Below are positions 17,163 through 60,999 of a stretch of 64,000 nt of DNA, one piece after another. Origin of the DNA: Octopus sinensis (lineage: Eukaryota); NCBI RefSeq assembly GCF_006345805.1, contig NW_021824836.1, forward strand, positions 1-64,000. The letters are read 5' to 3'. Every line of letters starts with the position of its first letter. Within the stretch, counting starts at the first letter, position 1. Made by a program: the position numbers and the translations under genes. Below the pieces are notes generated by a model. The model saw only the letters and a program-made list of their open reading frames with translations. It did not search any database and was not told where the DNA came from.

Positions 17163-17384
17163 CTATTTCTGTATTACCCACAAGGGGCTAAACATAGAGG
17201 GGACAAACAAGGACAGACATAGGTATTAAGTCGATTACATCGACCCCAGTGCGTAACTGGTACTTAATTTATCGACCCCGGAAGGATGAAAGGCAAAGTC
17301 GACCTCGGCGGAATTTGAACTCAGAACGTAACGGCAGACGAAATACGGCTAAGCATTTCGCCCGGCGTGCTAACGTTTCTGCCA
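17163..17384 (-). mobile_element. SINE family D nested in a family C tail
   Basis: TSD GACAAC on both sides; host family C sequence (17095-17560) resumes across it. Confidence 0.85.
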
Positions 17385-18537: not shown

Positions 18538-18935
18538 GACTGTGTGGTAAGTAGCCTGCTAACCAACCACATGGTTCCGGGTTCAGTCCCACTGCGTGGC
18601 ATCTTGGGCAAGTGTCTTCTGCTATAGCCCCGGGCCGACCAATGCCTTGTGAGTGGATTTGGTAGACGGAAACTGAAAGAAGCCTGTCGTATATATATAT
18701 ATGTGTGTGTGTTGTGTGTGTGTGTTTGTGTGTCTGTGTTTGTCCCCCTTGCATTGCTTGACAACCGATGCTGGTGTGTTTACGTCCCCATCACTTAGCG
18801 GTTCGGCAAAAGAGACCGATAGGATAAGTACTGGGCTTACAAAGAATAAGTCTCGGGTCGATTTTGCTCGATTAAAGGCGGTGCTCCAGCATGGCCGCAG
18901 TCAAATGACTGAAACAAGTAAAAGAGTAAAAGAGA
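18538..18935 (+). mobile_element. SINE family C
   Basis: Near identical to 19702-20100. Confidence 0.9.
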
Positions 18936-19701: not shown

Positions 19702-20100
19702 AGTGGCTGTGTGGTAAGTAGCTTGCTAACCAACAACATGGTTCCGGGTTCAGTCCCACTGCGTGGCATCTTGGGCAAGTGTCTGCTGCTATAGCCCCGG
19801 GCCGACCAATGCCTTGTGAGTGGATTTGGTAGACGGAAACTGAAAGAAGCCTGTCGTATATATGTATATATATTTGTGTGTGTATATGTTTGTGTGTCTG
19901 TGTTTGTCCCCCTAGCATTGCTTGACAACCGATGCTGGTGTGTTTACGTCCCCGTCACTTAGCGGTTCGGCAAAAGAGAACGATAGAATAAGTACTGAGC
20001 TTACAAAGAATAAGTCCCGGGGTCGATTTGCTCGACTAAAGGCGGTGCTCCAGCATGGCCTCAGTCAAATGACTGAAACAAGTAAAAGAGTAAAAGAGAG
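19702..20100 (+). mobile_element. SINE family C
   Basis: Full head-CORE-microsatellite-tail structure. Confidence 0.9.
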
Positions 20101-25559: not shown

Positions 25560-26690
25560 ATTAACTCTACAGGAATGGAAGCGCCGTCAGCCGGGCCTAC
25601 TCGAGATGCACGCAGAGCGATGAAACTGCTCTGCACGCACTCGTCCAGTGCTTGAGCATTACTGACTCGTGGATAAGGCGGCGAGCTGGCAGAGTCGTTA
25701 GCACGCCGGGCGAAATGCGTAGCCGTATTTCGTCTGCCGTTACGTACCGAGTTCAAATTCCGCCGAGGTCGACTTTGCCTCTCATCCTTTCGGGGTCGAT
25801 AAATTAAGTACCAGCTACGCACTGGAGTCGATATAATCGACTTAATCCGTTTGTCTGCCCTTGTTTGTCCTCTCTGTGTTTAGCCCCTTGTGGGTAGTAA
25901 AGAAATAGGTATTTCGTCTGCCGTTACGTTCTGTGTTCAAATTCCGCCAAGGTCGACTTTGCCTTTCATCCTTTCGGGGTCGATAAATTAAGTACTAGTT
26001 ACGCTATGGGGTCGATATAATCGACTTAATCCGTTTGTCTGTCCTTGTTTGTCCTCTCTGTGTTTAGCCCCTTGTGGGTAGTAAAGAAATAGGTATTTCG
26101 TCTGCCGTTATGTTCTGTGTTCAAATTCCGATTTCGGGGTCGATAAATTAAGTTCCAGTTACGCAATGGGGTCGATATAATCGACTTAATCCATCTGTCT
26201 GTCCTTGTTTGTCTCCTCTGTGTGTAGCCCCTTGTGGGCAGTAAAGAAATAGGTATTTCGCCCGTCTTTACGTTCTGAGTTCAAATTCCACCGAGGTCGA
26301 CTTTGCCTTTCATCCTTTCGGGGTCGATAAATTAAGTACCAGGGAAACACTGGAGTCAGTATAATCGACTAGTCCCCTCTTCCCCCAAAATTTTAGGCCT
26401 TGTGGCTTTAGTAGAAAGGATTACTGGCTCGTGGGTTTATCTCGAACATGTGCAGGACGGATCCGGCTATCGGTTGAGTCCAGAGTGAAGATCGTCACGT
26501 CGCCTTCTTTGGACCGGGAAGGACAGGCAGTGTTTATGTGTTTATTGGCCTTAGCGAAAGAGGTTGTGTGGTGGACTAGATTCAAAGAACTTTAAGTCAA
26601 ACACTTTCGTCTTTGGCCAAGCCCTCATCAGCTTTTTCAAGTTTCACTTGAAATGGAAAACGAAAATGGAAAGGAAAGTGCCTGTTAAGT
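25560..26690 (+). mobile_element. L1/Tx1-like LINE ORF2 3' remnant interrupted by a SINE-D array
   Basis: RC..SDETALHALVQC (CCHC knuckle) before the SINE; LLALAKEVVWWTR and ALISFFKFHLK after it. Confidence 0.6.
25677..26420 (+). mobile_element. SINE family D tetramer (three young units and one older-subfamily unit)
   Basis: One head, then repeats joined at AAAGAAATA|GGTATTTCG; outer TSD ATTACTG(A/G)CTCGTGG. Confidence 0.88.
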
Positions 26691-31092: not shown

Positions 31093-31138
31093 GTACATAC
31101 ATACATACATATATACATATGTACATACATATGTGTAA

Positions 31139-31368
31139 GGCGCCGAGCTGGCAGAATCGTTAGCACGCCGGGCGAAGTGCTTCGCGGTATTTCGCCCGTC
31201 GCTACGTTCTGAGTTCAAATTCCGCCGAGGTCGACTTTGCCTTTCATCCTTTCGGGGTCGATAAATTAAGTACCAGTTACGCACTGGGGCCGATGTAATC
31301 GACTTAATCCGTTTGTCTGTCCTTGTTTGCCCCCTCTATGTTTAGCCCCTTGTGGGTAGTAAAGAAAG
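31139..31368 (+). mobile_element. SINE family D monomer
   Basis: Head GGCGCCGAGCTGGCAGAATCG, B-box GAGTTCAAATTCC, TSD ACATATGT. Confidence 0.9.
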
Positions 31369-33589: not shown

Positions 33590-34150
33590 TCGAATTTCTG
33601 GAAGGAGGAATAGTTGTATATATCGATCATAATTGCTTGCCAGGTACGGTTCCTCATCAATCTAGGAAATATGAAAGATAAAGCTGACCTCGGTGGATTT
33701 GAACTCAGAACGTAGACAGACAGAACTAAATACTGCTTTGTCGATTCTGATAAGAATTTCTGATATAGGCACAAAGTCACAAAATGTTGAGATGGGATAT
33801 TGTTTTTTAGATAGATCCCAGAAGATTGAGAGGTAAAGTCAATCTTGGTAGGATTGAACTCAGAACGTAAGATATAACCATAAAACATTTGTCCAATTCT
33901 CCCGATTCCGGAAACCTACCCGTCTCCAAAGCTAATGATAAGGATTTCTGATCTAGGAACATTTCTGAGGGGAAGAAATTAATCGATTACACCGACCCCA
34001 GTACTAATCTGATATACAATTTGATCAACCCAGAGGGATGAAAGGTGGGGTTGATATCAGCTGGATTTGAACTAAGAACCTAAAGAGCCGTAACAAATAT
34101 CATACGGTATTTTTTCCAACGCTCTTACACTTCTTCCAGCTTGTTGCCTT
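33590..34150 (-). mobile_element. Several old SINE-D fragments
   Basis: Repeated degenerate GGATTTGAACTCAGAACG motifs. Confidence 0.65.
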
Positions 34151-34260
34151 TCAGAGCTAATAATAAAATTTAAGGTTCCAAATATGTAAAACAAAATGTA
34201 TAATACAAAGAGAGCAAAAACTTTTCCCAATATATTTAAACAGGTTCAAAATTCAATATA

Positions 34261-34860
34261 TATCTCTTTACTGCCCACAAGGGGCTAAACATAGACATAG
34301 AGGGGACAAAAAAGGACAGACAAACGGATTAAGTCGATTACATCGACCTCAGTGCGAAACTGGTACTTTATTTATCGACACCAAAAGGATGAATGGCAAA
34401 GTCAACCTCGGCGTAATTTGAACTCAGAACGTAACGGCAGACGAAATACCTATCTCTTTACTACCCACAAGGGGCTAAACACAGAGAGGACAAACCAGAC
34501 AGACAAACGGATTAAGTCGATTATATCGACCCCGTGCGTAACTGGTACTTATTTATCGACCCGAAAGGATAAAGGCAAAGTCAACCTCGGCGGAATTTGA
34601 ACTCAGAACGTAACGGTAGACGAAATACCTATTTCTTTACTGCCCACAAGGGGCTAAACACAGAGGGGACAAACAAGGACAGACATAGGTATTAAGTCGA
34701 TTACATCGACCTCAGTGCGAAACTGGTACTTAATTTATCGACACCAAAAGGATGAATGGCAAAGTCAACCTCGGCGGAATTTGAACTCAGAACGTAACGG
34801 CAGACGAAATACCGCTAAGCATTTCGCCCGGCGTGCTAACGTTTCTGCCAGCTCGCCATC
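34261..34860 (-). mobile_element. SINE family D trimer
   Basis: Three units with one head; 23-bp TSD AAACAGGTTCAAAATTCAATATA at 34238-60 and 34865-87. Confidence 0.9.
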
Positions 34861-35217
34861 TTTCAAACAGGTTCAAAATTCAATATACAAAACAAATGGT
34901 TCCCTAACTCACTAAATGCAAAGTTGCTGCGTAGGTAAGATTACAGCAGCCCACATCTCTGATCAGTTTCCGTTCCATTCACTTTCTATAACTGGGTCCT
35001 CCGAAACTGCTCGTCTACATCTAATTTTAACTGAACTATCGCACTTCAGCCGTGCAGTATATCAGGGTACCCCACATTATTTCTGACCAAATTGATGCGG
35101 AGTTTCAATTACGAAGCAAAGCTGGCCTAACCATTAAATTTCAACTACGGTATGTAAAAGCTCCTTAGTACACATATAAATCTCAGCTCATCCTAGACAT
35201 TACTATCCATAGCAAAA

Positions 35218-36250
35218 GGCGGTGTGGTGGCCGATCGTTAGCACGCTGGACAAAATACTTAGCGGCATTTCGTCCAACTTCATGTTCTGAATTCAGATAC
35301 CGCCGAGGTCGACTTTGTCTCTCATCTTTTTCAGGTCGATGAATTAAGTACCAGTTACGCACTGGGGTCGACATAATCGAGTCGTCCTTCGCCCAAAATT
35401 TCAAGCCTTGTGCTTATTATAGAAAGGATTATTATCCATAACAAAGGCGGCGAGCTGGCAGAAACGTTAGCACGCCGAGCGAAATGCTTAGCGGTATTTC
35501 GTCTGCCGTTACGTACTGAGTTCAAATTCCACCGAGGTCGACTTTGCCTTTCATCCTTTCGGGGTCGATTAAATTAAGTACCAGTTACGCACTGGGGTCG
35601 ATGTAATCGACTTAATACCTATGTCTGTCCTTGTTTGTCCCCTCTGTGTTTAGCCCCTTGTGGGTAATAAAGAAATAGGTATTTCGTCTGCCGTTACGTA
35701 CTGAGTTCAAATTCCACCGAGGTCGACTTTGCCTTTCATCCTTTCGGGGTCGATTAAATTAAGTACCAGTTACGCAATGGGGTCGATGTAATCAACTTAA
35801 TCCGTTTGTCTGTCCTTGTTTGTCCTCTCTATCCTTAGCTCCTTGTGGGTCGTAAAGAAATAGGTATTTCGTCTGCCATTACGTTGTGAGTTCAAATTCC
35901 GCCGAGGTCGACTTTACCTTTCATCCTTTCGGGGTCGATAAATAAAGTACCAGTTACGCACTGGGGTCGATGTAACCGACTTAATCCCTTTGTCTGTCCT
36001 TGTTTGTCCCCTCTATGTTTAGCCCCTTGTGGGCAGTAAATAAATAAGAATCATTAATGCGTCGGACAAAAGGCTTAGTGGCAATTCTTTCCGGCTTATT
36101 ATGTTCTTTGCTCAAATCTTGCCAAGATCAACCAAGTTTCATCCTTTCGGGGTGGGTAAAAATTAAAAATACCAGTTGAGAACTGGAGTTCATGTAATCG
36201 GCTATCCTTCTCCCACGAAATTTCAGGCCTTATGTTTATAGGAGAAATAA
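35218..36250 (+). mobile_element. SINE-D nest: old copy (35218-35428), young trimer (35446-36048), old remnant (36050-36250)
   Basis: Heads at 35218 and 35446; junctions AAAGAAATA|GGTATTTCG at 35677 and 35862. Confidence 0.85.
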
Positions 36251-36262
36251 TTATTCTCCATG

Positions 36263-36592
36263 ATTTCGATTCCCAGACCGGGCGTTGTGAGTGTTTATTG
36301 AGCGAAAACACCTAAAGCTCAACGAGGCTCCAGCAGGGGATGGTGATGATCCCTGCTGTACTCTTTCACCACAACTTTCTCTCACTCTTACTTCCTGTTT
36401 CTGTTGTACCTGTATTTCAAGGGGCCGGCCTTGTCACTCTCTGTGTCACGCTGAATATCCCCGAGAACTACGTTAAGGGTGCACGTGTCTGTGGAGTGCT
36501 CAGCCACTTACACGTTAATTTCACGAGCAGACTGTTCCGTTGATTCGGATCAACCGGAACCCTCGTCGTCGTAACCGACGGAGTTCTTCCAC
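36263..36592 (+). mobile_element. SINE family A, 5'-truncated at the B-box
   Basis: Starts TTTCGATTCCCAGACC; rest matches family A. Confidence 0.9.
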
Positions 36593-37334: not shown

Positions 37335-37347
37335 TATATATATATAT

Positions 37348-37738
37348 AGGCGCTGGAGTGGCTGTGTGGTAAGTAGCTTGCTAACCAACCACATGGTTCC
37401 GGGTTCAGTCCCACTACGTAGCATCTTGGGCAAGTGTCTTCTGCTATAGCCCCGGGCCGACCAATGCCTTGTGAGTGGATTTGGTAGACGGAAACTGAAA
37501 GAAGCCCAATTTATATATGTATATATATTTATGTGTGTGTGTATGTGTTTGTGTGTCTGTGTTTGTCCCCCTAGGATTGCTTGACAACCGATGCTGGTGT
37601 GTTTACGTCCCCGACAAAAGAGACCGATAGAACAAGTACTGGGCTTACAAAGAATAAGTCCTGGGGTCGATTTGCTCGACTAAAGGCGGTGCTCCAGCAT
37701 GGCCGCAGTCAAATGACTGAAACAAGTAAAAGGGAGAA
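37348..37738 (+). mobile_element. SINE family C
   Basis: Full structure. Confidence 0.9.
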
Positions 37739-38956: not shown

Positions 38957-40393
38957 GATGGCGGTGGTGGTGGTGGCGGTGGCGGCGGCGGCGGTGGTGG
39001 TGGTGTCGGCGGCGGCGGCGGTGGTGGTGGTGGTGGTTTTGGTGGTGATGGTGGTGGTGGTGGTGGTGGTGTGGTAGTGTCGGCGGCGGCGGTGGTGGTG
39101 GTAGTGGTGGTGGTGGTGGTGTCGGCGGCGGTGGTGGTGTCGGCGGTGGTGGTGGTGGTGGTGGCGGTGGTGGTTTTGGTGGTGATGGTGGTGGTGGTGG
39201 TGGTGGTAGTGTCGGCGGCGGCGGTGGTGGTGGTGGTGGTGGTAGTGGTGGGGTGGTGGTGGTCGGCGGCGGTGGGGGGTGGTCGGCGGCGGTGGTGGTG
39301 TCTGGCGGCGGTGGTGGTGGTGGTGGTGGTGGTGGTGGTGGTGGTGGTGTCGGCTGCGGCGATGGTGGCGGTGGTGGTGGCGGTGGTGGTGGTGGTGGTG
39401 GTGGTGGTGGTAGTGTCGGCGGCGGCGGTGGTGGTGTCGGCGGCGGCGGTGGTGGTGTCGGCGGCGGTGGTGGTGTCGGCGGTGGTGGTGGTGGTGGTGG
39501 TGGTGGTGTCGGGCTGCGGCGATGGTGGCGGTGGTGGTGGCGGTGGTGGTGGTGGTGGTGGGGTGGTGGTGGTGGTGGTGGTGGTGGTAATGATGATGAG
39601 AGTGATCATGGCGCGGTAGTGGTATTCATGATGATAATGATGATGATGATGAGAATAAGAACAGCTGCGACAGTAGCAACAGCAACAACAATAACACCAA
39701 CATCCATGCTGTAGCAATATTACACGACAATCACTGGCAGCGTCTCAGTTAATGATGCACCTAATGCAATACTGCAATGGTGTACGGTGAGACAATGACG
39801 ACGATGATGATGATGATGATGATGATGACGAGGAGGAGGATGAGGAGGATGAGGAAAAATAAGAGAAGGATATAGATAAGGATTCTGGTATTGATGATGA
39901 TGGTGGTGGTGGTGGTGGTGGTGGTGGTGGTTGGTGCTGTTGGTGGTGGTGGTGGTGGTGATGATGCTGAGGAGGAGGAGGAGAGGAAGAGGAGGAGGAG
40001 GAGAGGAAGAGGAGGAGGAGGAGAGGAAGAGGAGGAGGAGGAGAGGAAGAGGAGGAGGAGGAGGAAAAGATGATAATATGATGATATGATGGTGATCAGG
40101 AGGAGGAGGAGGAGGAGGAAAAGGAGGTGGAAGCGGAGGAGGAGAAAAAGGAAGAAGAAGAGAGGCGGAAGAGGAAAAGGAGGAGGAAGAGGTGGAGGAG
40201 GAGGAGGAAGATGGTGTTGACGACGACGGTGATTACATATCTGTCTGTGGCAAAGATGATCACAACGACGACGACGACGACGATAATGATGATATTGATG
40301 GAGTGGTGGTGGTGTGGTGGTGGTGGTGGTGGCAGACGGCGATTATTAAATGATCGTAGTAATAAAGGAGGTGATAATGATGATGATGACGAC

Positions 40394-42568: not shown

Positions 42569-42806
42569 GATTTAAGTGACAAAAGATTTAAGTGACAAAA
42601 GATTCAAGTGACAAAAGATTTAAGTGACAAAAGATTTAAGTGACAAAAGATTTAAGTGACAAAAGATTCAAGTGACAAAAGATTTAAGTGACAAAAGATT
42701 CAAGTGACAAAAGATTTAAGTGACAAAAGATTCAAGTGACAAAAGATTAAGTGACAAAAGATTTAAGTGACAAAAGATTCAAGTGACAAAAGATTTAAGT
42801 GACAAA
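42569..42806. repeat. 16-bp minisatellite, ~15 copies of GATTYAAGTGACAAAA
   Basis: Direct reading; T/C variant at one position; one unit has a 1-bp deletion. Confidence 0.95.
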
Positions 42807-44019: not shown

Positions 44020-44032
44020 AAGCACACATAAA

Positions 44033-44066
<34 letters not shown>

Positions 44067-44077
44067 CATACATACAT

Positions 44078-44109
<32 letters not shown>

Positions 44110-44189
44110 CATACATACATTACATACATACATACATACACACATACATACATACATATATACATACATACATTACATACATACATACA

Positions 44190-44220
<31 letters not shown>

Positions 44221-45398
44221 CATACATACATACATGCATACATACATACATACATACATACATACATACATACATACATACATGCATGCATACATACATA
44301 CATACATACACACATACATACATACATACATACATATATACATGCATGCATGCATGCATGCATACATACATACATACATACATACATTCATACATACATA
44401 CATACATACATGCATACATACATTCATACATACATACATACATGCATGCATGCATGCATGCATACATACGTACATACATACATACATACATACATACATA
44501 CATACATACATACATACATACATGCATGCATGCATGCATACATACATTCATACATACATACATAAATGCATGCATGCATACGTACGTACATACATACATA
44601 CATACATACATACAGACATGCATACATACATTCATACATACATACATACATGCATGCATACATACATACATACATACATACATGCATACATACATTCATA
44701 CATACATACATACATGCATGCATGCATACATACATACATACATACATACATACATGCATGCATACATACATACATACATACATACATACATGCATGCATA
44801 CATACATACATACATACATACATACATGCATGCATACATACATACATACATACATACATACATGCATACATACATTCATACATACATACATACATGCATG
44901 CATGCATGCATGCATACATACATACATACATACATGCATGCATGCATACATACATACATACATGCATGCATGCATGTATACATACATACATACATGCATG
45001 CATGCATGCATACATACATACATACATACATACATACATGCATGCATGCATGCATACATACATTCATACATACATACATAAATGCATGCATGCATACGTA
45101 CGTACATACATACATACATACATACATACAGACATGCATACATACATTCATACATACATACATACATACATGCATGCATACATACATACATACATACATA
45201 CATACATGCATACATACATTCATACATACATACATACATGCATGCATGCATACATACATACATACATACATGCATGCATGCATGCATGCATACATACATA
45301 CATACATACATACATACATACATACATACATACATGCATGCATGCATGCATGCATACATACATACATACATACATACATACATACATACATACATACA

Positions 45399-45429
<31 letters not shown>

Positions 45430-45437
45430 CGTACATG
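44020..45437. repeat. 1.4-kb (CATA/CATG)n compound microsatellite
   Basis: Direct reading; source of the 440-aa ORF. Confidence 0.97.
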
Positions 45438-47171: not shown

Positions 47172-48140
47172 GAAAATTAATTGCAAAGACAGAAATTTAG
47201 CTAGCAGATGGGAACAGAAACCTCTCCATGGCAAGTATGTGGCCCGTAGCAAACAAGCTGATGTCGACCAGAAACACACGCACCAATGGTTACGAAGCTC
47301 GGGGCTAAAAGCAGAGAGTGAAGGTTTCATATTAGCTGCTCAAGACCAAAGCTTATTAACCCGGAACTACCAAGTCAATGTGATAAAAAATCGAGCTGAC
47401 CCAAAATGCCGATTCTGTAACGATGAGATTGAAACAATAGACCACCTAATCTCAGGGTGTAGAGTCTTAGCACCTGCAGAATATAAAGCAAGACATGACA
47501 GAGTCGGCCACTATTTACATTGGACAATATGTCGGTATTATAAAATCAAAACCGCTGACAAATGGTATAAACACCATCCTGAAGCTGTGACTGCAGGAGA
47601 AAATATGTCGATTTTATGGGACTTCCCCGTACAGACCGACAAAACTATAAAAGCTAATAAACCGGATATTATTATAAAAGATCGGACAAAAAAGATGTGT
47701 TTATTAATTGACATGAGTATCCCTTGCGATCACAATATAGTGGCGAAAGAATTTGACAAGATTAGTAAATATAAAGACCTGCTAATAGAAATTGAAAAAA
47801 TGTGGCATCTCAAGGCGACTACAGTACCAGTGATTGTAGGATCTCTAGGAATGATAAAAAAGGGACTGAAACCTATTTGAAAATGATTCCAGGCTTACCA
47901 TCCCTACAGGAAGTGCAAAAAATCGTTTTAACTGGAACGGCTCATGTACTGAGAAGAGTACTATCACTGTGAAAATAACATCCATCCATGATTTTATTTA
48001 TTTATTAATTTTTAAATACATATTTTATCTGTGAATTTGCGTGTGTAATCTGGGAATGCATACAATGAGCTTCTCTGCCCTAGGTGTATGAAAAACACTC
48101 GGCGAGAAACGGAATAAAATTTGAAGAAAGAAGGAAAAAA
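47172..48140 (+). mobile_element. R4/Dong-like non-LTR retrotransposon 3' fragment (CCHC finger and restriction-like endonuclease)
   Basis: ORF 47239-47880: CRFC..ETIDHLISGC, RHD, KPDIII...LIDMSIP; flanked by (AAT/GAT)n and (AAT)n. Confidence 0.9.
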
Positions 48141-48141
48141 C

Positions 48142-48205
<64 letters not shown>

Positions 48206-48246
48206 TAAAAAGTAATAATGATAATGATAATAATAATAATAACTAA

Positions 48247-48688
48247 GGCGGCGAGCTGGCAGAATCGTTAGCACGCCGGACAAACTGCTTAGTGGCATTT
48301 CGTGCGTCCTTATGCTCTGAGATCAAATTTCTCCGAGGTGGACCTTGCCTTTCATCTTTCCGGATTCGATAAAATAAGTACCCGCTGAACACTGGGTTCG
48401 ATGTAATCCTCTTACTCCCTAGAAATTGATAGCCTTGTACCAAAATTTGAAAATCAATAATCATAATAATAATTGTTTCAAATTTTGGCACAAGGTCAGT
48501 CATTTTCGGAAAGGGAGAATAGTCATTACATCAACCCCAGTACATGACTGGTACTATATTTTATCGAGTTCGTAAGGCTGAAAGGCAAAGTCGACCTCGG
48601 CGGTATTTGATTTCAGAAATTAAAGAGATGGAAGAAATGCCGCTTAACACTTTGTGTGACGCGCCATCGATTCTCACAGTTATCGGCC

Positions 48689-48690
<2 letters not shown>
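48247..48690. mobile_element. Two old SINE-D copies tail-to-tail (+48247-48455, -48490-48690)
   Basis: Heads at both outer ends. Confidence 0.75.
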
Positions 48691-48748: not shown

Positions 48749-51435
48749 TCACAGAAAAAGATTTGCCGGAGATAAAGAAAAGCTGAAGCAAGATATCCTT
48801 GCCAAAGCTCAAAGGATCCGCCGGTACGAGAAACGCCAACGCTTCTTTGAACAGAACAAAAAGTTCAACTCCGACCCCAAAAAGTTCTACCAAGAACTGG
48901 GCAAAAATAAAATAGAAGTCACTGCAGCACCAACGGCAGAAGAATTGGAAGAATTCTGGAGAGAAATATGGTCGGCGAACGAACAGCCAAAAAAAAGGAG
49001 TATGAAAATAACAAACTCGGCATCTGAACAACTTTGGACCCCCATAACAACTGAAGAGGTCACCCAGGCACTGCAAAAACTAAACAACTGGAAGGCACCT
49101 GGGCATGACAAGATCCCCAACTTCTGGTTGAAATATCTAACAGGAATGCACAAAAAGCTGGCTGAAAACTTTAACAGCATACTAGCAGAGCCAGAGACAA
49201 TGCCTGAATGGCTCACGAAGGGGAAAACCACCTTAATTCCCAAATCAAATGAAACAACAAAACCAGAAAACTACAGACCAATAACCTGCCTCCCTACTAT
49301 GTTCAAGGCATTTACTGCAGTGATATCGCAAAGGCTGAACAAGCACCTGGACGAAAACAAACTGTTCCCAGAAGAGCAGAAAGGATGCCGCAAGATCAAC
49401 TAATGATTAATAAAGATCAACTAATGATTAATAAAGCCGTAACTGAAGACAGCCACAGAAAGAAGAAAGGCCTCAGTATGGCCTGGATTGACTACAAAAA
49501 GGCGTTTGATAGCATCCCCCACACATGGATCCTCGAAACACTAGCCATTAACAAAGTAGCACCAACAATCATAAAATTCATAGAGCACTCTATGAATAAA
49601 TGGCAACAGTCCTAACCTCCAAACAAAAGAGGGACTCATGAAACCAAAGACATCCCCATTAGAAGAGGAATATTCCAGGGAGACACGCTCTCTCCACTCC
49701 TTTTCTGCTTGGCACTGTCACCTCTATCTGATATGCTAATAGAACTGGATGCGGATATAAATGTTACGGCAAAACGATCAGCCACCTTTTATATATGGAT
49801 GACCTAAAACTATACGCTGCAAATGACAAACAGCTGGAAACACTATTAAAGACAGTTCATGGATTTACCAAAGAAATAGATATGAAATTTGGATTAGAAA
49901 AATGCGCCAAAGTAACCATGAAAAGAGGAAAACTAGTTAAGAGTAACAACATCACACTAGATAAAACCAATGAAATAAAAGAATTAGACCAAAGCCAAAC
50001 TTACAAATACTTAGGAATCCATGAACTAGATAAGACACAACCACCACAAATGAAAGAGAAAATAAAAAAGAATATTATAGACGAGTTAAATCAATACTAA
50101 AAACAGAGCTCAATGCTAAAAACAAGATAATAGGTATCAACACCTTAGCTGTCCCAGTTATAAGTTACAGCTACAATATCCTTAACTGGACACGAAATGA
50201 ACTGTCCAAAATAGATAGGAAAACAAGAAAATACTGACAGGATCTAGGATGCATCACCCAAATCTGACATAAAAAGACTATATATACAACGTATAGAAGG
50301 TGGTAGAGGCCTTATACAGCTGGAAAACTACTATAAAATAACCACCATAGGACTGCAAAAATACCTACTTCAGAAGGAAGGAAAACTGATCCAGATAGCA
50401 GCAAAACACGAGCAAAACAAAAAACTGTTCTCAGTATTTAAGGAAGCTGACAAATACAAACAAGAAATCATACCACCTAATAAACACAAGAAGAAGAAGA
50501 AGATAAAACAACAAAAGCTATAAAACAATGAAATCCAAACTAAAAATAGAACAGCAACGAGCCATGATAAAACGATGGCAAGAAAAGCCCCTTCATGGTA
50601 AATACTGCACTAAACTAAACGCAAAAGAATAGACAAAGAAAAATCCCAGCAATGGTTGAGAAGCTCAGGACTCAAAGCAGAAACAGAGGGATTTTTAATT
50701 GCAGCACAAGACCAAAGCCTCCCCACCAGAAATTACCAAAAACATGTAATGAAAAGAAAAATTACAAGTAACTGCAGATATATGTGGAGATGGACAAGAA
50801 ACAATAAATCATATTATCTCTAGCTGCCCAGTCCTGGCTAAGAAGGAATATATTCACAGACATGACAGAGTTGGAACCTACATACATTGGAAGCTATGCC
50901 AACATTATGGAATAACAACAGAAAAAAAATGGTATAGGCACACACCAGAAAAGGTCACAGAAACGAGAAAGCAACCATACTCTGGGATATGCCGATACAC
51001 ACAGATAGAGAAATTAAGGCCAACAGACCAGATATAGTTGTCAGAGATCATGAAGAAAAAAATGCTTTCTAATTGATGTATCAATACCGGCAGATGACAA
51101 CGTGTCTCTAAAAGAAATGGAGAAACTCTCAAAATACAAAACCTGGAAATAGAGGTAACTAGAATGTGGAACCTGAAAACAGAAACAATTCCTATCATAG
51201 TGGGTGCATTAGGCATGATAAAAAAATATTCAGACAAATACATAACAAAAACACCAGGACTTACAAACACATATAACATACAGAAAATTGCACTACTAGG
51301 CACTGCACACATCCTACGCAGAACACTTTCCATACAATAACCATCAGAGCATCACAACAAATCACAGCACATACCAAGGCACACAGAGCTGCGCTCGGTA
51401 GTGAAGTGAAAGCACGCTATAAAAATATACTACTG
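48747..51435 (+). mobile_element. R4/Dong-like non-LTR retrotransposon, 5'-truncated, frameshifted RT and REL endonuclease
   Basis: WKAPGHDKIPNFWLK, NYRPITCLPT, MAWIDYKKAFDSIPH, YMDDLKLYA, RHDRV, RPDIV; embedded in (AAT)n on both sides. Confidence 0.92.
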
Positions 51436-52626: not shown

Positions 52627-53192
52627 TACTTTTTTACTCTTTTACTTGTTTCAGTCATTTGACTGCGGCCATGCTGGAGCACCGCCTTTAGTCGAGCAAA
52701 TCGACCCCGGGACTTATTCTTTGTAAGCCCAGTACTTATTCTATCGGTCTCTTTTGCCGAACCGCTAAGTGACGGGGACGTAAACACACCAGCATCGGTT
52801 GTCAAGCAATGCTAGGGGGACAAACACGGACACACAAACACACACATACATATGTATATATATACATATATACGACAGGCTTCTTTCAGTTTCCGTCTAC
52901 CAAATCCACTCACAAGGCATTGGTCAGCCCGGGGCTATAGCAGAAGACACTTGCCCAAGATGCCACGCAGTGGGACTGAACCCGGAACCATGTGGTTGGT
53001 TAGCAGGCTTAAAAGACTCCGCCGGTTACGACGACGAGGGTCCCAGCTGATTAAAGTGTCTTGCTCAAGGACACAACGCGTCGCCGGGAATCGAACTCAC
53101 AACCTTACGATCATGAGCCGAATGCCCTAACCACTAAGCCACGCGCCCTCACCGGTTAGCAGGCTACTTACCACACAGCCACTCCTGCGCCT
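52627..53192 (-). mobile_element. SINE family C with an internally deleted CORE-SINE (53010-53153) inserted in its head
   Basis: 12-bp TSD GGTTAGCAGGCT at 52998 and 53154. Confidence 0.85.
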
Positions 53193-54628: not shown

Positions 54629-54921
54629 CAGACAGAAAGACAAACAAACAAGTCCTACTTATGATCAACGGCGTTCCAGCCTTGACTATAATACTTTTGT
54701 AAAACACCAATATTGAAGCTAGAAATAGTTGTCAAATCGCCCTCAAATCACACACACACACTCAAAAACAGAAGTCCATGTCAGATAATGTAATTAAGTT
54801 TTCTGAAGAAAAACAAATAAATAAAAGACAGCATTATCAAGGTTGGAACATCTGACACGGGTCGACTGGATCAGAGGCGATAGCAACAACGACCGTACCA
54901 AATGCCCTTTCCACAAATACC

Positions 54922-57903
54922 TATTTCTATTTCTTTATTACCCACAAGGGGCTAAACACAGAGGGAACAAACAAGGACAGACATAGGTATTAAGTCGATT
55001 ACATCGACCCCAGTGCGTAACTGGTACTTAATTTATCGACCCTGAAAGGATGAAAGGCAAAGTCGACCTCGGCGAATTTGAACTCAGAACGTAACGGCAG
55101 ACAAAAACCTATTTCTTTATGACCCACAAGGGGCTAAACACAGAGGGGACAAACAAGGACAGACATAGGTTATTAAGTCGATTACATCGACCCCAGTGCG
55201 TAACTGGTACTTAATTTATCGACCCCGAAAGGATGAAAGGCAAAGTCGACCTTGGCGGAATTTGAACTCACAACGTAACGGCAGACAAAATACCTATTTC
55301 TTTATGACCCACAAGGGGCTAACACAGAGGGGACAAACAAGGACAGACATAGGTATTAAGTCGATTACATCGACCCCAGTGCGTAACTGGTACTTAATTT
55401 ATCGACCCTGAAAGGATGAAAGGCAAAGTCGACCTCGGCGGAATTTGAACTCAGAACGTAACGGCAGACAAAATACCTATTTCTTTATGACCCACAAGGG
55501 GCTAAACACAGAGGGGACAAACAAGGACAGACATAGGTATTAAGTCGATTACATCGACCCCAGTGCGTAACTGGTACTTAATTTATCGACCCTGAAAGGA
55601 TGAAAGGCAAAGTCGACCTCGGCGGAATTTGAACTCAGAACGTAACGGCAGACAAAATACCTATTTCTTTATGACCCACAAGGGGCTAAACACAGAGGGG
55701 ACAAACAAGGACAGACATAGGTATTAAGTCGATTACATCGACCCCAGTGCGTAACTGGTACTTAATTTATCGACCCTGAAAGGATGAAAGGCAAAGTCGA
55801 CCTCGGCGGAATTTGAACTCAGAACGTAACGGCAGACAAAATACCTATTTCTTTATGACCCACAAGGGGCTAAACACAGAGGGGACAAACAAGGACAGAC
55901 ATAGGTATTAAGTCGATTACATCGACCCCAGTGCGTAACTGGTACTTAATTTATCGACCCCGAAAGGATGAAAGGCAAAGTCGACCTCGGCGGAATTTGA
56001 ACTCAGAACGTAACGGCAGACTAAATACCTATTTCTTTATTACCCACAAGGGGCTAAACACAGAGGGGACAAACATGGACAGACATAGGTATTAAGTCGA
56101 TTACATCGACCCCAGTGCGTAACTGGTACTTAATTTATCGACCCTGAAAGGATGAAAGGCAAAGTCGACCTCGGCGGAATTTGAACTCAGAACGTAACGG
56201 CAGACAAAATACCTATTTCTTTATGACCCACAAGGGGCTAAACACAGAGGGGACAAACAAGGACAGACATAGGTATTAAGTCGATTACATCGACCCCAGT
56301 GCGTAACTGGTACTTAATTTATCGACCCCGAAAGGATGAAAGGCAAAGTCGACCTCGGCGGAATTTGAACTCAGAACGTAACGGCAGACAAAATACCTAT
56401 TTCTTTATGACCCACAAGGGGCTAAACACAGAGGGGACAAACAAGGACAGACATAGGTATTAAGTCGATTACATCGACCCAGTGCGTAACTGGTACTTAA
56501 TTTATCGACCCTGAAAGGATGAAAGGCAAAGTCGACCTCGGCGGAATTTGAACTCAGAACGTAACGGCAGACAAAATACCTATTTCTTTATGACCCACAA
56601 GGGGCTAAACAGAGGGGACACCAAGGACAGACATAGGTATTAAGTCGATTACATCGACCCCAGTGCGTAACTGGTACTTAATTTATTATCGACCCTGAAA
56701 GGATGAAAGGCAAAGTCGACCTCGGCGGAATTTGAACTCAGACGTAACGGCAGACAAAATACCTATTTCTTTATGACCCACAAGGGGCTAAACAAGAGGG
56801 GACAAACAAGGACAGACATAGGTATTAAGTCGATTACACATCGACCCCAGTGCGTAACTGGTACTTAATTTATCGACCCTGAAAGGATGAAAGGCAAAGT
56901 CGACCTCGGCGGAATTTGAACTCAGAACGTAACGGCAGACAAAATACCTTTTCTTTATGACCCACAAGGGGCTAAACACAGAGGGGGACACAAGGACAGA
57001 CATAGGTATTAGTCGATTACATCGACCCAGTGCGTAACTGGTACTTAATTTATCGACCCCCCGAAAGGATGAAAGGCAAAGATCGACCTCGGCGGAATTT
57101 GAACTCAGAACGTAACGGCAGACTAAATACCTATTTCTTTATTACCCACAAGGGGCTAAACACAGGGGACAAACATGGACAGACATAGGTATTAAGTCGA
57201 TTACATCGACCCCAGTGCGTAACTGGTACTTAATTTATCGACCCTGAAAGGATGAAAGGCAAAGTCGACCTCGGCGGAATTTGAACTCAGAACGTAACGG
57301 CAGACAAAATACCTATTTCTTTATGACCCACAAGGGCTAAACACAGAGGGGACAACAAGGACAGACATAGGTATTAGTCGATTACATCGACCCCAGTGCG
57401 TAACTGTACTTAATTTATCGACCCCGAAAGGATGAAAGGCAAAGTCGACCTCGGCGGAATTTGAACTCAGAACGTAACGGCAGACAAAATACCTATTTCT
57501 TTATGACCCACAGGGGCTAAACACAGAGGGGGACAAACAAGGACAGACATAGGTATTAAGTCGATTACATCGACCCCAGTGCGTAACTGGTACTTAATTT
57601 ATCGACCCTGAAAGGATGAAAGGCAAAGTCGACCTCGGCGGAATTGAACTCAGAACGTAACGGCAGACAAAATACCTATTTCTTTATGACCCACAAGGCT
57701 AAACACAGAGGGGACAAACAAGGACAGACATAGGTTAAGTCGATTACATCGACCCCAGTGCGTAACTGGTACTTAATTTATCGACCCCGAAAGGATGAAA
57801 GGCAAAGTCGACCTCGGCGGAATTTGAACTCAGAACGTAGCGGCAGACGAAATACCGCTAAGCATTTCGCCCGGCGTGCTAACGTTTCCGCCAGCTCGCC
57901 GCC
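54922..57903 (-). repeat. Tandem array of 16 x ~184-bp SINE-D units behind a single SINE head
   Basis: Unit starts about every 184 bp (54926, 55109, 55294, 55477, 55661 ...57675); head at 57856-57903; TSD TTTCCACAAATACC at 54908 and 57905. Confidence 0.95.
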
Positions 57904-58419
57904 TTTTCCACAAATACCACAACAGGAAACTTGTTGTTTCATAGTGGTACTTTTTCTTTTCTTTTTCTTTTTGTTTTTTCAGCTTTGATCGGGCTTGGTC
58001 AGATAGATCTTATTGGCAAAAGGAGTCCAGCTTTGGTCATCCGATCCTTTCATTTCAACGCGGTGTTTGTGAGACCACGTTGTCTAATATCTCCTGTATT
58101 GTGTAAACATGTGTAGTATTTGGAGTCAGCGCCATGTGCAGATTCGTATGTTTTATTTTATGCATTGTATTCTTTTTCAAGACTGTAAGGAAGAGGATTT
58201 AGCTGCTATCTCTAGCATGCCACGCTGTCATGTGAAACTCCTCTCTCTCTCTCTCTTTCTCTCCCTCTCTCCCCACTCTCTCTCTCTCCCTCCCTCTTGC
58301 TTGTGGTTGTTGGTTCAATTGTATAAAAAGTACGATGAACGGAAATCAAAGATATCTAGGACAGCAGAGTTGAACAAAATTCTACTTAGAAAATAAACAA
58401 CTAAGTAACAATGAAAAGG

Positions 58420-58577
58420 AAGTATGTATGTATGTATGTATGTATGTATGTATGTATGTATGTATGTATGTATGTATGTATGTATGTGTGTACGTGCTAT
58501 GTATATATGTATGTATGCATGTATATATGTATGTATGTATGAATGTATGTATGTATGTATGAATGTATGTATGCATG

Positions 58578-58611
<34 letters not shown>

Positions 58612-58641
58612 TGTATGTATGTATATATGTATGTATGTATG

Positions 58642-58675
<34 letters not shown>

Positions 58676-58793
58676 TGTATGCATGTATGTATGTATGTAT
58701 GAATGTATGTATGTATGTATGTATGTATGTATGTATGTATGTATGTATGTATGCATGTATATATGTATGTATGTATGAATGTATGTATGTATG

Positions 58794-58827
<34 letters not shown>

Positions 58828-58971
58828 TGTATGCATGTATGTATGTATGTATGTATGTATGCATGTATGTATGTATGTAGGTAGGTAGGTAGGTGAATGT
58901 GTGGGTGGGTAGGTGTATGTAAGTATGTATGCATGTGTGTATGTTTGTATGTGTGCGTTTATGTATGTATT

Positions 58972-59013
<42 letters not shown>

Positions 59014-60135: not shown

Positions 60136-60615
60136 ACAATTCTTGGGGTTTGTATCTACCTGTATTGTTTAATGTACACATATATGCGTACGTGTCAAAA
60201 TAGCACAAAATGTGTGTACGTTTCATTATTTTCTATGTACATGCATACGTGTGTAGATATATGATTCAGTTCATATGTTCTCCCAGGTACATAAAATGGC
60301 GAGTCTCTGAAATGTTTTGCAAATTTTACACTGTTCCGCTAATCGATTGTATCTGAAGAAAGCGAATCAGTTAACTCTGTTGTTTGTTTGTTTTTTAAGA
60401 ACCGAAGTATTTCTAGTCTTTTTTTATTTTTTTGTTAATGCAGGTCTGTTGTTGTACAGATCAGTTGAGTCATGATAATAGGAACAAATGAAAATCTATA
60501 ACCCGGACTTAAAATGTACAACTTTTGTTCCCTGTCCCATACAATTATATCTGACCTGTTGTGCTTACACTGATTGCTACTCTTATGAACGTATATATTT
60601 TATATTTTATATTGG

Positions 60616-60847
60616 AAGGCGGCGAGCTGGCAGAAACGGTAGCACGCCGGGCGAAATACGAAGCCGTATTTCGTCTGCCGTTACGTTCTGAGTTCAAATT
60701 CCGCCGAGGCTGACTTTGCCTTTCATCCTTTCGGAGTCGATAAATTAAGTACCAGTTACGCACTGGGGTCGATGGAATCGACTTAATCGCTTTGTCTGTC
60801 CTTGTTTGTCCCCTCTGTGTTTAGCCCCTTGTGGGTAGTAAAGAAAT
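60616..60847 (+). mobile_element. SINE family D monomer
   Basis: Full head and tail; TSD TATATATTTTATAT. Confidence 0.9.
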
Positions 60848-60999
60848 ATATATTTTATATGTACACACACACTCACACACACGCACGCACACATACACAC
60901 ACAAAGTTTTCATTCGTACCTCAGTGATTAAGCATTCTCCAGTCTTGTATAATAAAATAATGTATTCAAGGAAGAGAAATAATCCTTTATATTATAGGC

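What the first reader, a model, noticed from the sequence alone, without database searches (positions are those of the whole stretch)
54908..57918. A SINE that multimerises through one fixed junction inside its own head: 16-unit array within a single TSD
Seen: one tRNA-like head (A-box) is followed on the minus strand by 16 units of about 184 bp, each running from GGTATTT (between the A- and B-boxes) to the tail AAAGAAATA. The whole 3 kb is bounded by one 14-bp TSD. The same tail|GGTATTT junction occurs in independent multimers at 25677-26420, 34261-34860 and 35446-36048. On the SINE strand the genomic TSD here also begins GGTATTT, although other TSDs in the window do not. Inference: a shared junction at four loci is hard to explain by random unequal crossover. 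It suggests either self-targeted insertion with homology-guided 5' joining, or rolling-circle reverse transcription of a circular or template-switched RNA (retrozyme-like), followed by DNA-level expansion. Each unit keeps a B-box, so the array may also be a cluster of TFIIIC sites. The central segment GCCTTTCATCCTTTCGGGGTCGATAAATTAAGTACCAG resembles, from memory, the Meta domain of MetaSINEs.
Basis: partly seen in the sequence, partly recalled or inferred. Interest (0 to 1): 0.8.

Follow-up and report, generated by a model that had tools for sequence, protein, structure and literature searches.

The report
SINE body amplified into tandem array
One copy of a short mobile element (a SINE) has had its 184-bp body-plus-tail segment multiplied to 16 head-to-tail copies; arrays built this way are already described in clams and reptiles, and how the shared join between copies first forms is still open.

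Summary
On the minus strand, 54922-57904 is one SINE head followed by 16 units of 180-188 bp. The whole is flanked by an exact 14-bp target-site duplication (TSD), GGTATTTGTGGAAA. Three other multimers in the window use the same tail|G48 join. The array grew mainly at the DNA level: units repeat with a 6-unit (1.1-kb) higher-order period. The three short multimers are mixtures of body subtypes A1, A2a and A2b, one of them ending in a unit of family B. They therefore cannot be rolling-circle copies of one template or simple local duplications of a monomer. No ribozyme or tRNA model matches. G48 is the top base of the 3' arm of a 13-bp head hairpin that is conserved across the related SINE families. 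Tail-to-internal joins with older SINE families also occur at about position 15 and about position 120. The origin of the join is unresolved among three options: inheritance from multimeric source copies, reverse-transcriptase template jumping, and insertion into a resident SINE. The same architecture, TSD-(SINE)n-TSD, is published for the clam Scapharca broughtonii, and SINE-derived satellites are published for squamates. This is a new member of a known kind, of moderate interest.

The parts
57905..57918 (-). 5' copy of the target-site duplication (GGTATTTGTGGAAA on the SINE strand)
   Evidence: Exact 14/14 match to 54908-54921.
57857..57904 (-). The single SINE head (consensus positions 1-47). 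It carries the degenerate A-box region and the 5' arm and loop of the head hairpin.
   Evidence: The hairpin has dG -19.5 kcal/mol, z -2.9, and 0 of 200 shuffles fold as well. Across 16 copies of families A, B, C and X, 82% of cells are paired, against 40-55% for slid registers.
57677..57856 (-). Unit 1, next to the head. It starts GGTATTTCGTCTGCCGCTACG and differs from all other units at consensus positions 55 and 64.
57314..57676 (-). Units 2-3, which correspond to the last two positions of the 6-unit higher-order block.
   Evidence: u02 = u08 = u14 and u03 = u09, with 0 substitutions.
56214..57313 (-). Units 4-9: first full copy of the 6-unit (about 1.1-kb) higher-order repeat.
   Evidence: Mean substitutions are 1.22 at lag 6 and 1.33 at lag 12, against 2.2-3.3 at other lags; u04 = u10.
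55110..56213 (-). Units 10-15: second full copy of the higher-order repeat.
54922..55109 (-). Unit 16, the terminal unit, with a longer tail AAAGAAATAGAAATA. It resembles u04/u10 at the GGGTAAT variant.
54908..54921 (-). 3' copy of the target-site duplication. It begins with the same 7-mer (GGTATTT) that starts every unit.
25675..26419 (+). Independent multimer: head plus three A-type units (the third has a 24-bp deletion) plus a fourth unit with the 3' module and tail of family B. All joins are tail|G48. TSD ATTACTG(A/G)CTCGTGG at 25658-25672 and 26420-26434.
34261..34864 (-). Independent multimer: head plus three units (A1-like, A2a, A2b). The 23-bp TSD is exact, at 34238-34260 and 34865-34887.
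35446..36249 (+). Composite: head plus three A units (A1, A2a, A2b; 35446-36046). The last tail abuts an older X-type SINE that starts at its position of about 15 (36047-36249). Related copies of one target lie at 35428-35445 and 36250-36263.
17164..17384 (-). A1 monomer, 5'-truncated by about 11 nt. TSD GGTTGTC.
31137..31366 (+). A2 monomer.
60616..60846 (+). A2 monomer. TSD TATATATTTTATAT at 60592-60605 and 60847-60860.

Best explanation
This is a SINE-derived tandem array (a minisatellite) sitting inside one retrotransposon insertion. One A1-subfamily SINE, or a short A1 multimer, integrated by target-primed reverse transcription and made the 14-bp TSD. The 184-bp segment from G48 to the tail was then amplified on the chromosome. 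G48 is the top of the 3' arm of the head hairpin and lies upstream of the B-box. Amplification was by in-register unequal crossing-over or replication slippage, most recently as a 6-unit, 1.1-kb block. This part is shown.

The tail|G48 join is a family-level feature and was not invented at this locus. This part is inferred. A-family multimers probably exist as source copies that lack a T4 Pol III terminator and are transcribed and copied as multimers. That would explain why other loci carry the same join inside a single TSD with units of mixed subtype in the same order.

At this locus the join was probably seeded by a 7-bp direct repeat: GGTATTT occurs at position 48 and again at the start of the target site. 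That target may have been chosen through microhomology with a source RNA that continued into ...AAAUA|GGUAUUU. Once a dimer exists, any in-register exchange reproduces the join.
For: Anatomy and TSD. DNA-level growth: substitution distance drops at lags 6 and 12 (1.22 and 1.33 against 2.2-3.3), and u04=u10, u03=u09, u02=u08=u14. All 16 units are subtype A1. Units 2-16 share T or A at position 55 and T at position 64, which unit 1 lacks, as expected if one early second unit was amplified and the edge unit escaped homogenisation.

Family-level join: 4 of 7 A-family loci in 64 kb are multimers with the identical join, 22 joins in all. The short multimers contain subtypes that also occur elsewhere as monomers. 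In their 3' parts, units match units at other loci in the same order: 34k_u1 vs 35k_u1 differ at 2 sites, 25k_u2 vs 34k_u2 at 2, and 34k_u3 vs 35k_u3 at 4. G48 is present in 22 of 22 joins although 3 of 7 head-adjacent units have C48.

Transcription: the consensus, the three monomers and the 35k trimer have no TTTT on the SINE strand, so read-through of several units is possible. This array has TTTT at 13 of 15 joins.

Local DNA exchange also occurs in the short multimers. The 5' parts of 34k u1/u3 and of 35k u1/u2 differ at only 2 sites. The 34k variants create a T4 run that a Pol III template should not carry. The 25k pattern (P,A2a)(Q,A2a)(Q,A2b) is exactly what an unequal crossover within a dimer produces.

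Microhomology: the two A1 insertions that end after a first-unit-type tail have TSDs beginning GGTATTT and GGT.

Precedent: the same TSD1-(SINE)n-TSD1 architecture, with arrays of 4-15 units, is described in Scapharca broughtonii (PMC11481361). In squamates, SINE-derived satellites with one unit shared by thousands of loci are described (PMC10702118).
Against: The census covers four multimers in one 64-kb window, so the evidence for positional correspondence between loci is modest: 34k vs 35k differ by 14.7 sites per unit in register, against 18.5-20 out of register. It is absent for 25k vs 34k. The 5' parts of units group within loci and not between them, so reticulate exchange blurs any descent signal. 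The 25k multimer ends in a B-family unit joined at the same position 48. The 35k and L004 composites show that tail-to-internal joins are formed anew in this genome. That favours a recurrent, retrotransposition-linked process for at least some joins. No multimeric master or multimeric RNA has been observed. A 7-bp repeat is a weak substrate for slippage across 184 bp. The copy number rests on an assembly that has clustered 1-bp indels.
Confidence: 0.55

Rival explanations
1. Reverse-transcriptase template jumping. During a single integration event the LINE enzyme copies one SINE RNA from its tail to G48. It stops there, either at the apex of the 13-bp head hairpin or at the 5' end of an RNA cleaved in the hairpin loop. 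It then jumps to the 3' end of another SINE RNA, and this repeats until a full-length RNA supplies the head. Multimers would then be made anew at each insertion.
For: Each multimer has a single TSD and one full head. Units of different subtypes and families lie in one element, and the 3'-most unit is from the older family B or X in two of four multimers. The join maps to the top of a conserved, stable hairpin. Composite joins occur at other positions with tail-like microhomology: AGAAT at X position 15 and ATAAAT at B position of about 120 in L004.
Against: It cannot account for the 6-unit higher-order repeat of this array. It does not predict the same subtype order in 34k and 35k. If position 48 were copied from donor RNAs, 3 of 7 of which carry C48, G48 should not be invariant. 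The 34k u1/u3 shared variants include a T4 run that is unlikely in a Pol III RNA. The TSD-like copies around the 35k composite differ at 3 of 15 positions, which looks older than its A units. No headless copy starting at G48 is seen in the window.
Confidence: 0.2
2. Self-targeted insertion. The endonuclease nicks a resident SINE just 5' of GGTATTT. A new SINE RNA is reverse-transcribed there. The 5' end is resolved by annealing to the homologous resident sequence. This adds one precise unit with no visible TSD, so units accumulate over time next to the head.
For: A genomic GGTATTT site was nicked at exactly that phase (TSD of this array). Microhomology-guided 5' joining is seen in the truncated 17-kb monomer (GGTTGTC-TGGC / GGTTGTC-AGGC). 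In all three mixed multimers the order from head to tail runs from the youngest subtype (A1: 2-3% pairwise divergence) to older ones (A2: 6.5-9.5%) and then to families B or X. The head-adjacent units of 34k and 35k have 0 private substitutions, against 2-6 in the other units. The A units at 35k have no TSD of their own.
Against: Target choice looks loose: other TSDs start TATATT, GGTTGTC, ACATATG or ATTACTG. Yet this model needs about half of all A insertions in the window to hit the 7-bp internal site of a few resident copies. The 25k head plus u1 carry the C48 haplotype, which is seen contiguously in two monomers. That suggests the head belongs with u1 and not with a resident B element. The start of 25k u1-u3 is A-like and not the B-like CGCCCGTC expected from a duplicated target. 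The model does not explain the higher-order repeat.
Confidence: 0.15
3. Rolling-circle reverse transcription of a 184-nt circular SINE RNA (retrozyme-like) produces the multimers.
For: The unit length is constant and the join is precise. The join falls in or next to a hairpin loop where an RNA could be cleaved and ligated. The join is palindromic, GAAATAGGTATTTC.
Against: Units within the 25k, 34k and 35k multimers differ by linked subtype-diagnostic changes that are shared with other loci, so they were not copied from one template. Every multimer begins with the head, which a circle of positions 48-231 lacks. No hammerhead or other self-cleaving ribozyme matches, at gathering score over the whole window or at E<=10 over two units and the head. 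The homogeneous 16-mer shows block duplication instead.
Confidence: 0.03
4. The 16-copy array, or its length, is an assembly artefact of noisy long reads across a shorter multimer.
For: Single-base indels are concentrated in units 1-8 (1-7 indel columns each) and nearly absent from units 9-15. Tandem arrays are commonly mis-sized in assemblies (PMC10702118).
Against: Both unique flanks, the TSD, the distinct first and last units and a consistent 6-unit variant pattern are present. Three shorter multimers with the same join lie elsewhere in the window. At most the artefact reading would change the copy number.
Confidence: 0.05

Closest known systems
TSD1-(SINE)n-TSD1 tandem SINE arrays of the blood clam Scapharca broughtonii (Mob DNA 2024, PMC11481361)
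   Same: There is one TSD pair around the whole array. The first element has the complete head, the internal repeats are truncated in the head at one fixed position, and the last unit has the same head truncation and the fullest tail. Arrays of 4-15 units occur, some including units of another family. Here there are 16 units, the last tail is 6 nt longer, and the 25k and 35k multimers end in B or X units.
   Different: The host organism is unknown and the SINE family could not be matched to theirs. Here the internal units keep essentially the whole tail. That paper proposes unequal recombination between TSDs. Here the join lies inside the head at a hairpin apex, and the TSD shares 7 nt with it.
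SINE-derived satellites (sSat) of squamate reptiles (Mob DNA 2023, PMC10702118)
   Same: The repeat unit starts in the 3' part of the head and includes box B. One end unit is extended to the SINE terminus. The same unit boundaries recur at many independent loci. Subvariants alternate (higher-order pattern), and longer arrays are more homogeneous.
   Different: The snake unit is 67 nt (positions 42-108) and lacks the tail. Here the unit runs to the very end of the SINE, so each join is tail-to-head. The authors report no true dimeric Squam SINEs.
Dimeric and multimeric SINEs that amplify as multimers (Alu; Dip/B1 multimers of jerboas, cited in PMC10702118)
   Same: Several SINE-derived units lie within one TSD and are copied as one RNA, which is the inferred route for the 25k, 34k and 35k elements.
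   Different: Those consist of complete monomers or of fixed left and right arms. Here only the first unit has the A-box part of the head, and the unit number varies from 3 to 16.
Retrozymes and other rolling-circle retroelements
   Same: They are non-autonomous, mobilised by a borrowed reverse transcriptase, and form tandem units with a precise join.
   Different: No hammerhead or other ribozyme is present. The units are heterogeneous, and a head lies outside the unit.
PcH-sat satellite of the limpet Patella caerulea, derived from a Nin-SINE (PMC11121367)
   Same: It is a mollusc satellite whose monomer derives from a SINE segment that includes a conserved central domain.
   Different: That monomer lacks boxes A and B and forms a centromeric satellite. 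Here the B-box is kept and the array is a 3-kb dispersed locus still inside its TSD.

Membership tests
SINE (Pol III-transcribed, LINE-mobilised short retroposon) | Many dispersed copies with individual target-site duplications | tested here: met
   About 22 loci of the superfamily lie in 64 kb, 7 of them family A. TSDs of 7-23 bp flank 8 or more copies.
SINE (Pol III-transcribed, LINE-mobilised short retroposon) | Internal A and B promoter boxes and no internal T4 terminator | tested here: inconclusive
   A B-box-like GAGTTCAAATTCC is present in every unit. The A-box region TGGCAGAAACG is degenerate. The consensus and the three monomers have no TTTT. This is motif-level evidence only; no transcription data are available.
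SINE (Pol III-transcribed, LINE-mobilised short retroposon) | Head recognisable as tRNA-derived | tested here: not met
   ARAGORN finds 0 genes in the window. The Rfam tRNA model gives no match at gathering score, nor at E<=10 on the head. The head instead folds as an acceptor-like stem plus a 13-bp hairpin.
SINE (Pol III-transcribed, LINE-mobilised short retroposon) | 3' tail shared with a partner LINE | not tested
   Families A, B and X share a CCTTGTG(G/C)C stem-loop and an AGAAA(T/G)... tail. No LINE 3' end with this tail was found in the window; the LINE fragment at 47239-47880 ends in (AAT)n.
TSD1-(SINE)n-TSD1 tandem SINE array (PMC11481361) | One TSD pair around the whole array and none between units | tested here: met
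   The TSD is 14/14 at 54908-54921 and 57905-57918. The joins are direct tail|G48 with nothing between.
TSD1-(SINE)n-TSD1 tandem SINE array (PMC11481361) | The first unit has the full head, the internal units share one head truncation point, and the last unit has the fullest tail | tested here: met
   All 15 joins are at position 48, and the last tail is AAAGAAATAGAAATA.
SINE-derived satellite in the sense of PMC10702118 | Tandem unit derived from part of a SINE, with the same unit at many loci and satellite-like homogenisation | tested here: inconclusive
   The same unit occurs at 4 loci in 64 kb. A higher-order repeat and edge-unit divergence are seen. Genome-wide abundance and chromosomal location are unknown.
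MetaSINE superfamily (PMC4824008) | The 66-bp Meta-domain in the central region | not testable with these tools
   No Meta-domain sequence is available in the held text or supplements. The only finding is that 49 nt of the core (GTCGACTTTGCC...AAGTACCAG) recur at 80% identity in an unrelated SINE-like context on two metagenome contigs. That shows the core is a widely shared domain of some superfamily. From memory it could equally be Nin-DC/Deu-like.
Retrozyme / rolling-circle retroelement | Self-cleaving ribozyme in each unit | tested here: not met
   No ribozyme family matches at gathering score or at E<=10 over two units and the head.
Retrozyme / rolling-circle retroelement | Units of one multimer are copies of one template | tested here: not met
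   Mixed subtypes A1/A2a/A2b/B are present within the 25k, 34k and 35k multimers.

The most novel reading that the evidence does not exclude
The tail|G48 join is re-created repeatedly by the retrotransposition machinery itself. The mechanism would be template jumping or target priming, guided by the head hairpin and by the 7-nt GGUAUUU identity between the RNA downstream of a tail and the internal site. In that case a SINE would carry a built-in, RT-driven route to tandem multimerisation. The target-site microhomology (a TSD starting GGTATTT) would then pass the join on even through monomeric daughter copies, which re-expand on the chromosome into satellite-like arrays.
Probability: 0.25. Interest if true: 0.6.

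Novelty: new member of a known kind. Interest (0 to 1): 0.38.

Why it matters
Tandem arrays that start from SINEs are one of the few visible bridges between dispersed repeats and satellite DNA. The published cases in clams and squamates leave the first step unexplained, namely why the same unit boundary recurs at many loci. This locus offers a compact, testable case. The boundary sits at the apex of a conserved hairpin in the head. The array's own target site repeats the first 7 nt of the unit. Mixed-subtype multimers and tail-to-internal composites lie in the same 64 kb. A genome-wide census could separate inheritance from multimeric masters and recurrent RT-mediated joining. If each unit's B-box binds TFIIIC, such arrays would also be dense clusters of TFIIIC sites, but nothing here tests that.

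Tried and rejected
1. External census. An exact scan with the 20-nt core GTCGATAAATTAAGTACCAG gave 3 metagenome contigs that share only the 49-nt core, or only the 20-mer. It gave 0 viral and 0 prokaryotic-genome contigs.

2. Protein-space route to more copies. The antisense SINE ORF that runs across the join was used as a query and gave one hit. That hit led to a 543-bp ENA contig (L004) with an A-type monomer that is 87% identical. No multimers were found.

3. Organism identification. The LINE ORF has only 69-71% relatives (for example Penaeus indicus and Clytia), which is not diagnostic. Exact look-ups of two window ORFs were not on record.

4. Literature search by sequence strings found nothing relevant. 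No supplementary text is held for the three SINE papers.

5. A tRNA or ribozyme identity for the head or unit was rejected.

6. A simple local tandem duplication of a monomer at each locus was rejected for 25k, 34k and 35k because their units are of different subtypes.

7. I considered treating the B-type last unit of 25k as proof of a second independent join, and then weakened that reading. Its 5' part carries the CGCCCGTC haplotype that is also seen in the A2 monomer at 31 kb. A module swap within the conserved core of an existing multimer is therefore not excluded.

8. The palindromic join (GAAATAGGTATTTC) as a stable structure: it folds only weakly (-8.9 kcal/mol, z -1.2), and the TTTT variant of this array does not form it at all.
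Full report
**Observation**

Tandem Repeats Finder reports an array at 54927-57856 with period 184, 16.0 copies and 96% matches. I read the region on the minus strand. The order is:
- a 14-nt GGTATTTGTGGAAA;
- one SINE head (57904-57857);
- 16 units of 180-188 bp, each starting GGT(A/T)TTT and ending AAAGAAATA, the last ending AAAGAAATAGAAATA;
- the same 14-nt sequence again.

On the + strand the duplication is TTTCCACAAATACC at 54908-54921 and 57905-57918, an exact 14/14 match.

**The family in the window**

I searched the window with a 231-nt consensus (head 1-47, unit 48-231).
- Three monomers: 17164-17385 (minus), 31139-31367 (plus) and 60618-60848 (plus).
- Three further multimers: 25677-26420 (plus), 34261-34857 (minus) and 35446-36046 (plus).
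- In each multimer every internal join is position 231|48, AAAGAAATA|GGTATTTCG.

A profile search finds about 22 loci of the wider superfamily in 64 kb. These include older families, here called B, C and X. They share the head and central core but have other 3' modules and tails.

TSDs were found for most copies:

| Copy | TSD | Match |
|---|---|---|
| 25k multimer | 15 bp | 14/15 |
| 34k multimer | 23 bp | 23/23 |
| 60k monomer | 14 bp | exact |
| 17k monomer | GGTTGTC | exact |

Only the array's TSD begins GGTATTT. The 17k TSD begins GGT.

**What the head is**

ARAGORN finds no tRNA. Rfam gives no tRNA match at gathering score, nor at E<=10 on a full monomer or on the head alone. 'tRNA-like' therefore rests only on box-like motifs.

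The RNA fold gives an acceptor-like stem and a 13-bp hairpin, CGGGCGAAAUGCU-UAGC-GGUAUUUCGUCUG.
- On its own the hairpin has dG -19.5 kcal/mol, z -2.9, and 0 of 200 shuffles fold as well.
- Across 16 copies of families A, B, C and X, 82% of cells pair in this register, against 40-55% in slid registers. The covariation score is reached by 7 of 500 shuffles.
- G48, the first base of every unit, is the top base of the 3' arm, directly after the loop.
- With the tail, the join reads GAAATAGGTATTTC, a palindrome. It folds only weakly, and not at all in the TTTT variant of this array.

**How this array grew**

Substitution distances between units fall at lags 6 and 12 (1.22 and 1.33) against 2.2-3.3 at the other lags. 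In addition u04=u10, u03=u09 and u02=u08=u14. So the array contains two full copies and parts of further copies of a 6-unit, 1.1-kb block. That is the signature of DNA-level unequal exchange or slippage and not of unit-by-unit reverse transcription.

All units are subtype A1. Unit 1 alone has C55 and C64. Units 2-16 share T (or A) at position 55 and T at position 64. This is expected if one early second unit was amplified while the edge unit escaped homogenisation.

The T55 change gives 13 of the 15 joins a TTTT run, which no other A-A join in the window has. A Pol III transcript of this array would probably stop at the first join.

Single-base indels cluster in units 1-8. This suggests uneven polishing and leaves the copy number unverified.

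**What the short multimers say**

Two body subtypes exist. A1 carries AATACCTATG. A2 carries AATCCGTTTG and has sub-variants A2a and A2b. Both occur as monomers. The multimers have these compositions:

| Multimer | Units, head to tail |
|---|---|
| 34k | A1-like, A2a, A2b |
| 35k | A1, A2a, A2b |
| 25k | A2a, A2a, A2b-like (24-bp deletion), then a unit with the B-family 3' module and tail |

The TSD of 25k starts ATTA, like those of other B copies.

In the 3' parts, units are closest to units at other loci: 35k_u1 vs the array differ at 1 site, 34k_u1 vs 35k_u1 at 2, 25k_u2 vs 34k_u2 at 2, and 34k_u3 vs 35k_u3 at 4. In the 5' parts they are closest to a sister unit at the same locus: 34k u1-u3 differ at 2 sites, 35k u1-u2 at 2, and 25k u2-u3 at 5.

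Three conclusions follow.
- First, these multimers are not local duplications of one monomer, and they are not rolling-circle copies of one template.
- Second, DNA-level exchange also acts inside them. The 25k pattern is exactly what unequal crossover within a dimer produces. The variants shared by 34k u1 and u3 include a T4 run that a Pol III template should not carry.
- Third, the same subtype order at different loci suggests one of two histories. Either the multimers were copied as multimers from related masters, or units were added next to the head in chronological order. A1 pairs differ by 2-3% and A2 pairs by 6.5-9.5%. The head-adjacent units of 34k and 35k have no private substitutions, while the others have 2-6.

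**Other joins**

At 35k the last A tail abuts an X-type SINE that starts at about its position 15 (36046|36047).
- The A units have no TSD of their own.
- A sequence related to the 5' flank follows the X tail: ATTATTATCCATAAC against ATTATTCTCCATGAT, 12/15.
- The same target also flanks the B copy upstream (35199-35216 and 35428-35445).

In L004, a 543-bp contig from a related organism, an A monomer (87% identity over 233 nt) is followed directly by a B-type 3' part from about position 120.

Tail-to-internal composites with older families therefore occur at positions 48, about 15 and about 120, each without the older element's 5' part upstream. A|A joins, by contrast, are all at position 48. 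They all carry G48 (22 of 22), although 3 of 7 head-adjacent units carry C48.

**Interpretation**

What is shown: one insertion within one TSD; a family-wide join; DNA-level block amplification of this array; mixed-subtype multimers elsewhere; and a join at the apex of a conserved hairpin.

What is inferred concerns the origin of the join. I favour a combined account, with confidence about 0.55.
- The join is carried by multimeric A-family source copies. Copies without T4 can be transcribed through several units.
- The join is reproduced by in-register exchange.
- This locus began as an A1 monomer or short A1 multimer whose target happened to start with GGTATTT, or was selected to do so by microhomology with a source RNA continuing ...AAAUA|GGUAUUU.
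- That target gave a 7-bp direct repeat exactly one unit apart, which seeded the local array.

The chance of that 7-mer at a TSD start is about 6 in 100,000, so some causal link is likely. The link may be microhomology-guided priming, an endonuclease preference, or seeding of slippage.

The rivals are as follows.
- RT template jumping at the hairpin (0.2). It explains the mixed units and the older 3'-most units. It does not explain the higher-order repeat, the constant order or the invariant G48.
- Self-targeted insertion with homology-guided resolution (0.15). It explains the young-to-old order and the absence of private changes in first units. It needs an implausibly high hit rate given the loose TSD starts, and it conflicts with the C48 haplotype of the 25k head plus u1.
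- Rolling-circle copying (0.03). It is contradicted by unit heterogeneity, by the head, and by the absence of any ribozyme.
- Assembly artefact (0.05). At most it affects the copy number.

**Comparison with what is known**

The architecture matches the TSD1-(SINE)n-TSD1 arrays described in the clam Scapharca broughtonii. There the first element has a complete head, the internal units are truncated in the head, the last unit has the complete tail, arrays reach 4-15 units, and some include other families (PMC11481361).

It also parallels the SINE-derived satellites of squamates. Their unit begins in the box-B part of the head, recurs with the same limits at up to thousands of loci, and shows alternating subvariants (PMC10702118).

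A limpet satellite derived from a Nin-SINE is a further mollusc example (PMC11121367).

Those papers invoke unequal recombination and leave the recurrent boundary unexplained. The present locus adds three details: the hairpin-apex position, the TSD-unit 7-mer identity, and the composites.

The Meta-domain claim could not be tested. The core is certainly a widely shared domain, because 49 nt recur at 80% identity in an unrelated SINE-like context on metagenome contigs.

**Verdict**

This is a real feature and an ordinary kind of object: a new member of the known class of SINE-derived tandem arrays. The mechanistic question attached to it is unresolved and testable. Interest 0.38.

Noticed in passing
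window 33600-36300: A SINE nest. Three older X-type SINEs lie in tandem on the minus strand (about 34150-33633), at least one with its own TSD (TTATTATTAGCT/TTATCATTAGCT at 34155-34166 and 33930-33941). They are followed by the 34k A-trimer (minus), a B copy (35216-35427), the 35k A-trimer and an X remnant. Three related copies of one target (ATTAYTMTCCATRA) lie at 35199-35216, 35428-35445 and 36250-36263. This looks like a target-site triplication, the 'TSD1-(SINE-TSD1)n' pattern.
   Followed up: partly
window 48245-48690: Two SINEs of a further subfamily (tail ...CCTTGTRCCAAAATTTGAAA) lie tail-to-tail in inverted orientation, separated by a short AAT/ATT repeat. This forms a palindromic SINE pair.
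   Followed up: no
window 47239-47880 and 48945-49403: LINE fragments: a C-terminal ORF with a CCHC-like motif, followed by (AAT)n at 48142-48242, and a reverse-transcriptase N-terminal ORF. The closest database proteins are only 69-71% identical (for example Penaeus indicus and Clytia hemisphaerica), so the host organism was not identified.
   Followed up: partly
window, whole: Microsatellite load is very high: 130 TRF rows. Examples are (ACAT)n of 1.4 kb at 44026-45436, (GTAT)n at 8608-9326 and 58422-59006, (TGG)n at 38959-39588, and a 16-bp minisatellite GATTTAAGTGACAAAA x15 at 42569-42806.
   Followed up: no
window 17563-17665, 18541-18624, 19703-19781, 37343-37446, 52938-53009; L004 1-140 (reverse strand): A second, unrelated SINE-like family (...GCCACGCGATGGGACTGAACCTGGAACCATGT...) is present in at least 5 copies at 79-85% identity to the copy on the ENA contig L004. 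L004 therefore comes from a relative of the host.
   Followed up: partly
L004 (ENA ERZ23499442 scaffold_285125), reverse strand about 144-480: An A-type monomer whose tail (CGAAATAAATATA) runs directly into a B-type SINE 3' part starting at about position 120 (TTAAGTTGCCGTTGCGTACTG...). This is a tail-to-internal composite at a position other than 48.
   Followed up: partly
L001 2787-2835, L002 4693-4741: Two JGI metagenome contigs carry a different SINE-like element that shares only 49 nt of the central core (80% identity, ending GTCGATAAATTAAGTACCAG). This is evidence that the core is a conserved domain shared across distant hosts.
   Followed up: partly
window 26092-26251: Unit 3 of the 25k multimer has a 24-bp internal deletion that removes the 3' end of the B-box region and the start of the core (TTCCG|ATTTCGGGG).
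   Followed up: no
window 56400-57900 versus 55100-56400: Single-base indels are concentrated in the head-proximal half of the array: 1-7 indel columns per unit in u01-u08, against 0-1 in u09-u15. This suggests uneven consensus quality in the assembly.
   Followed up: partly
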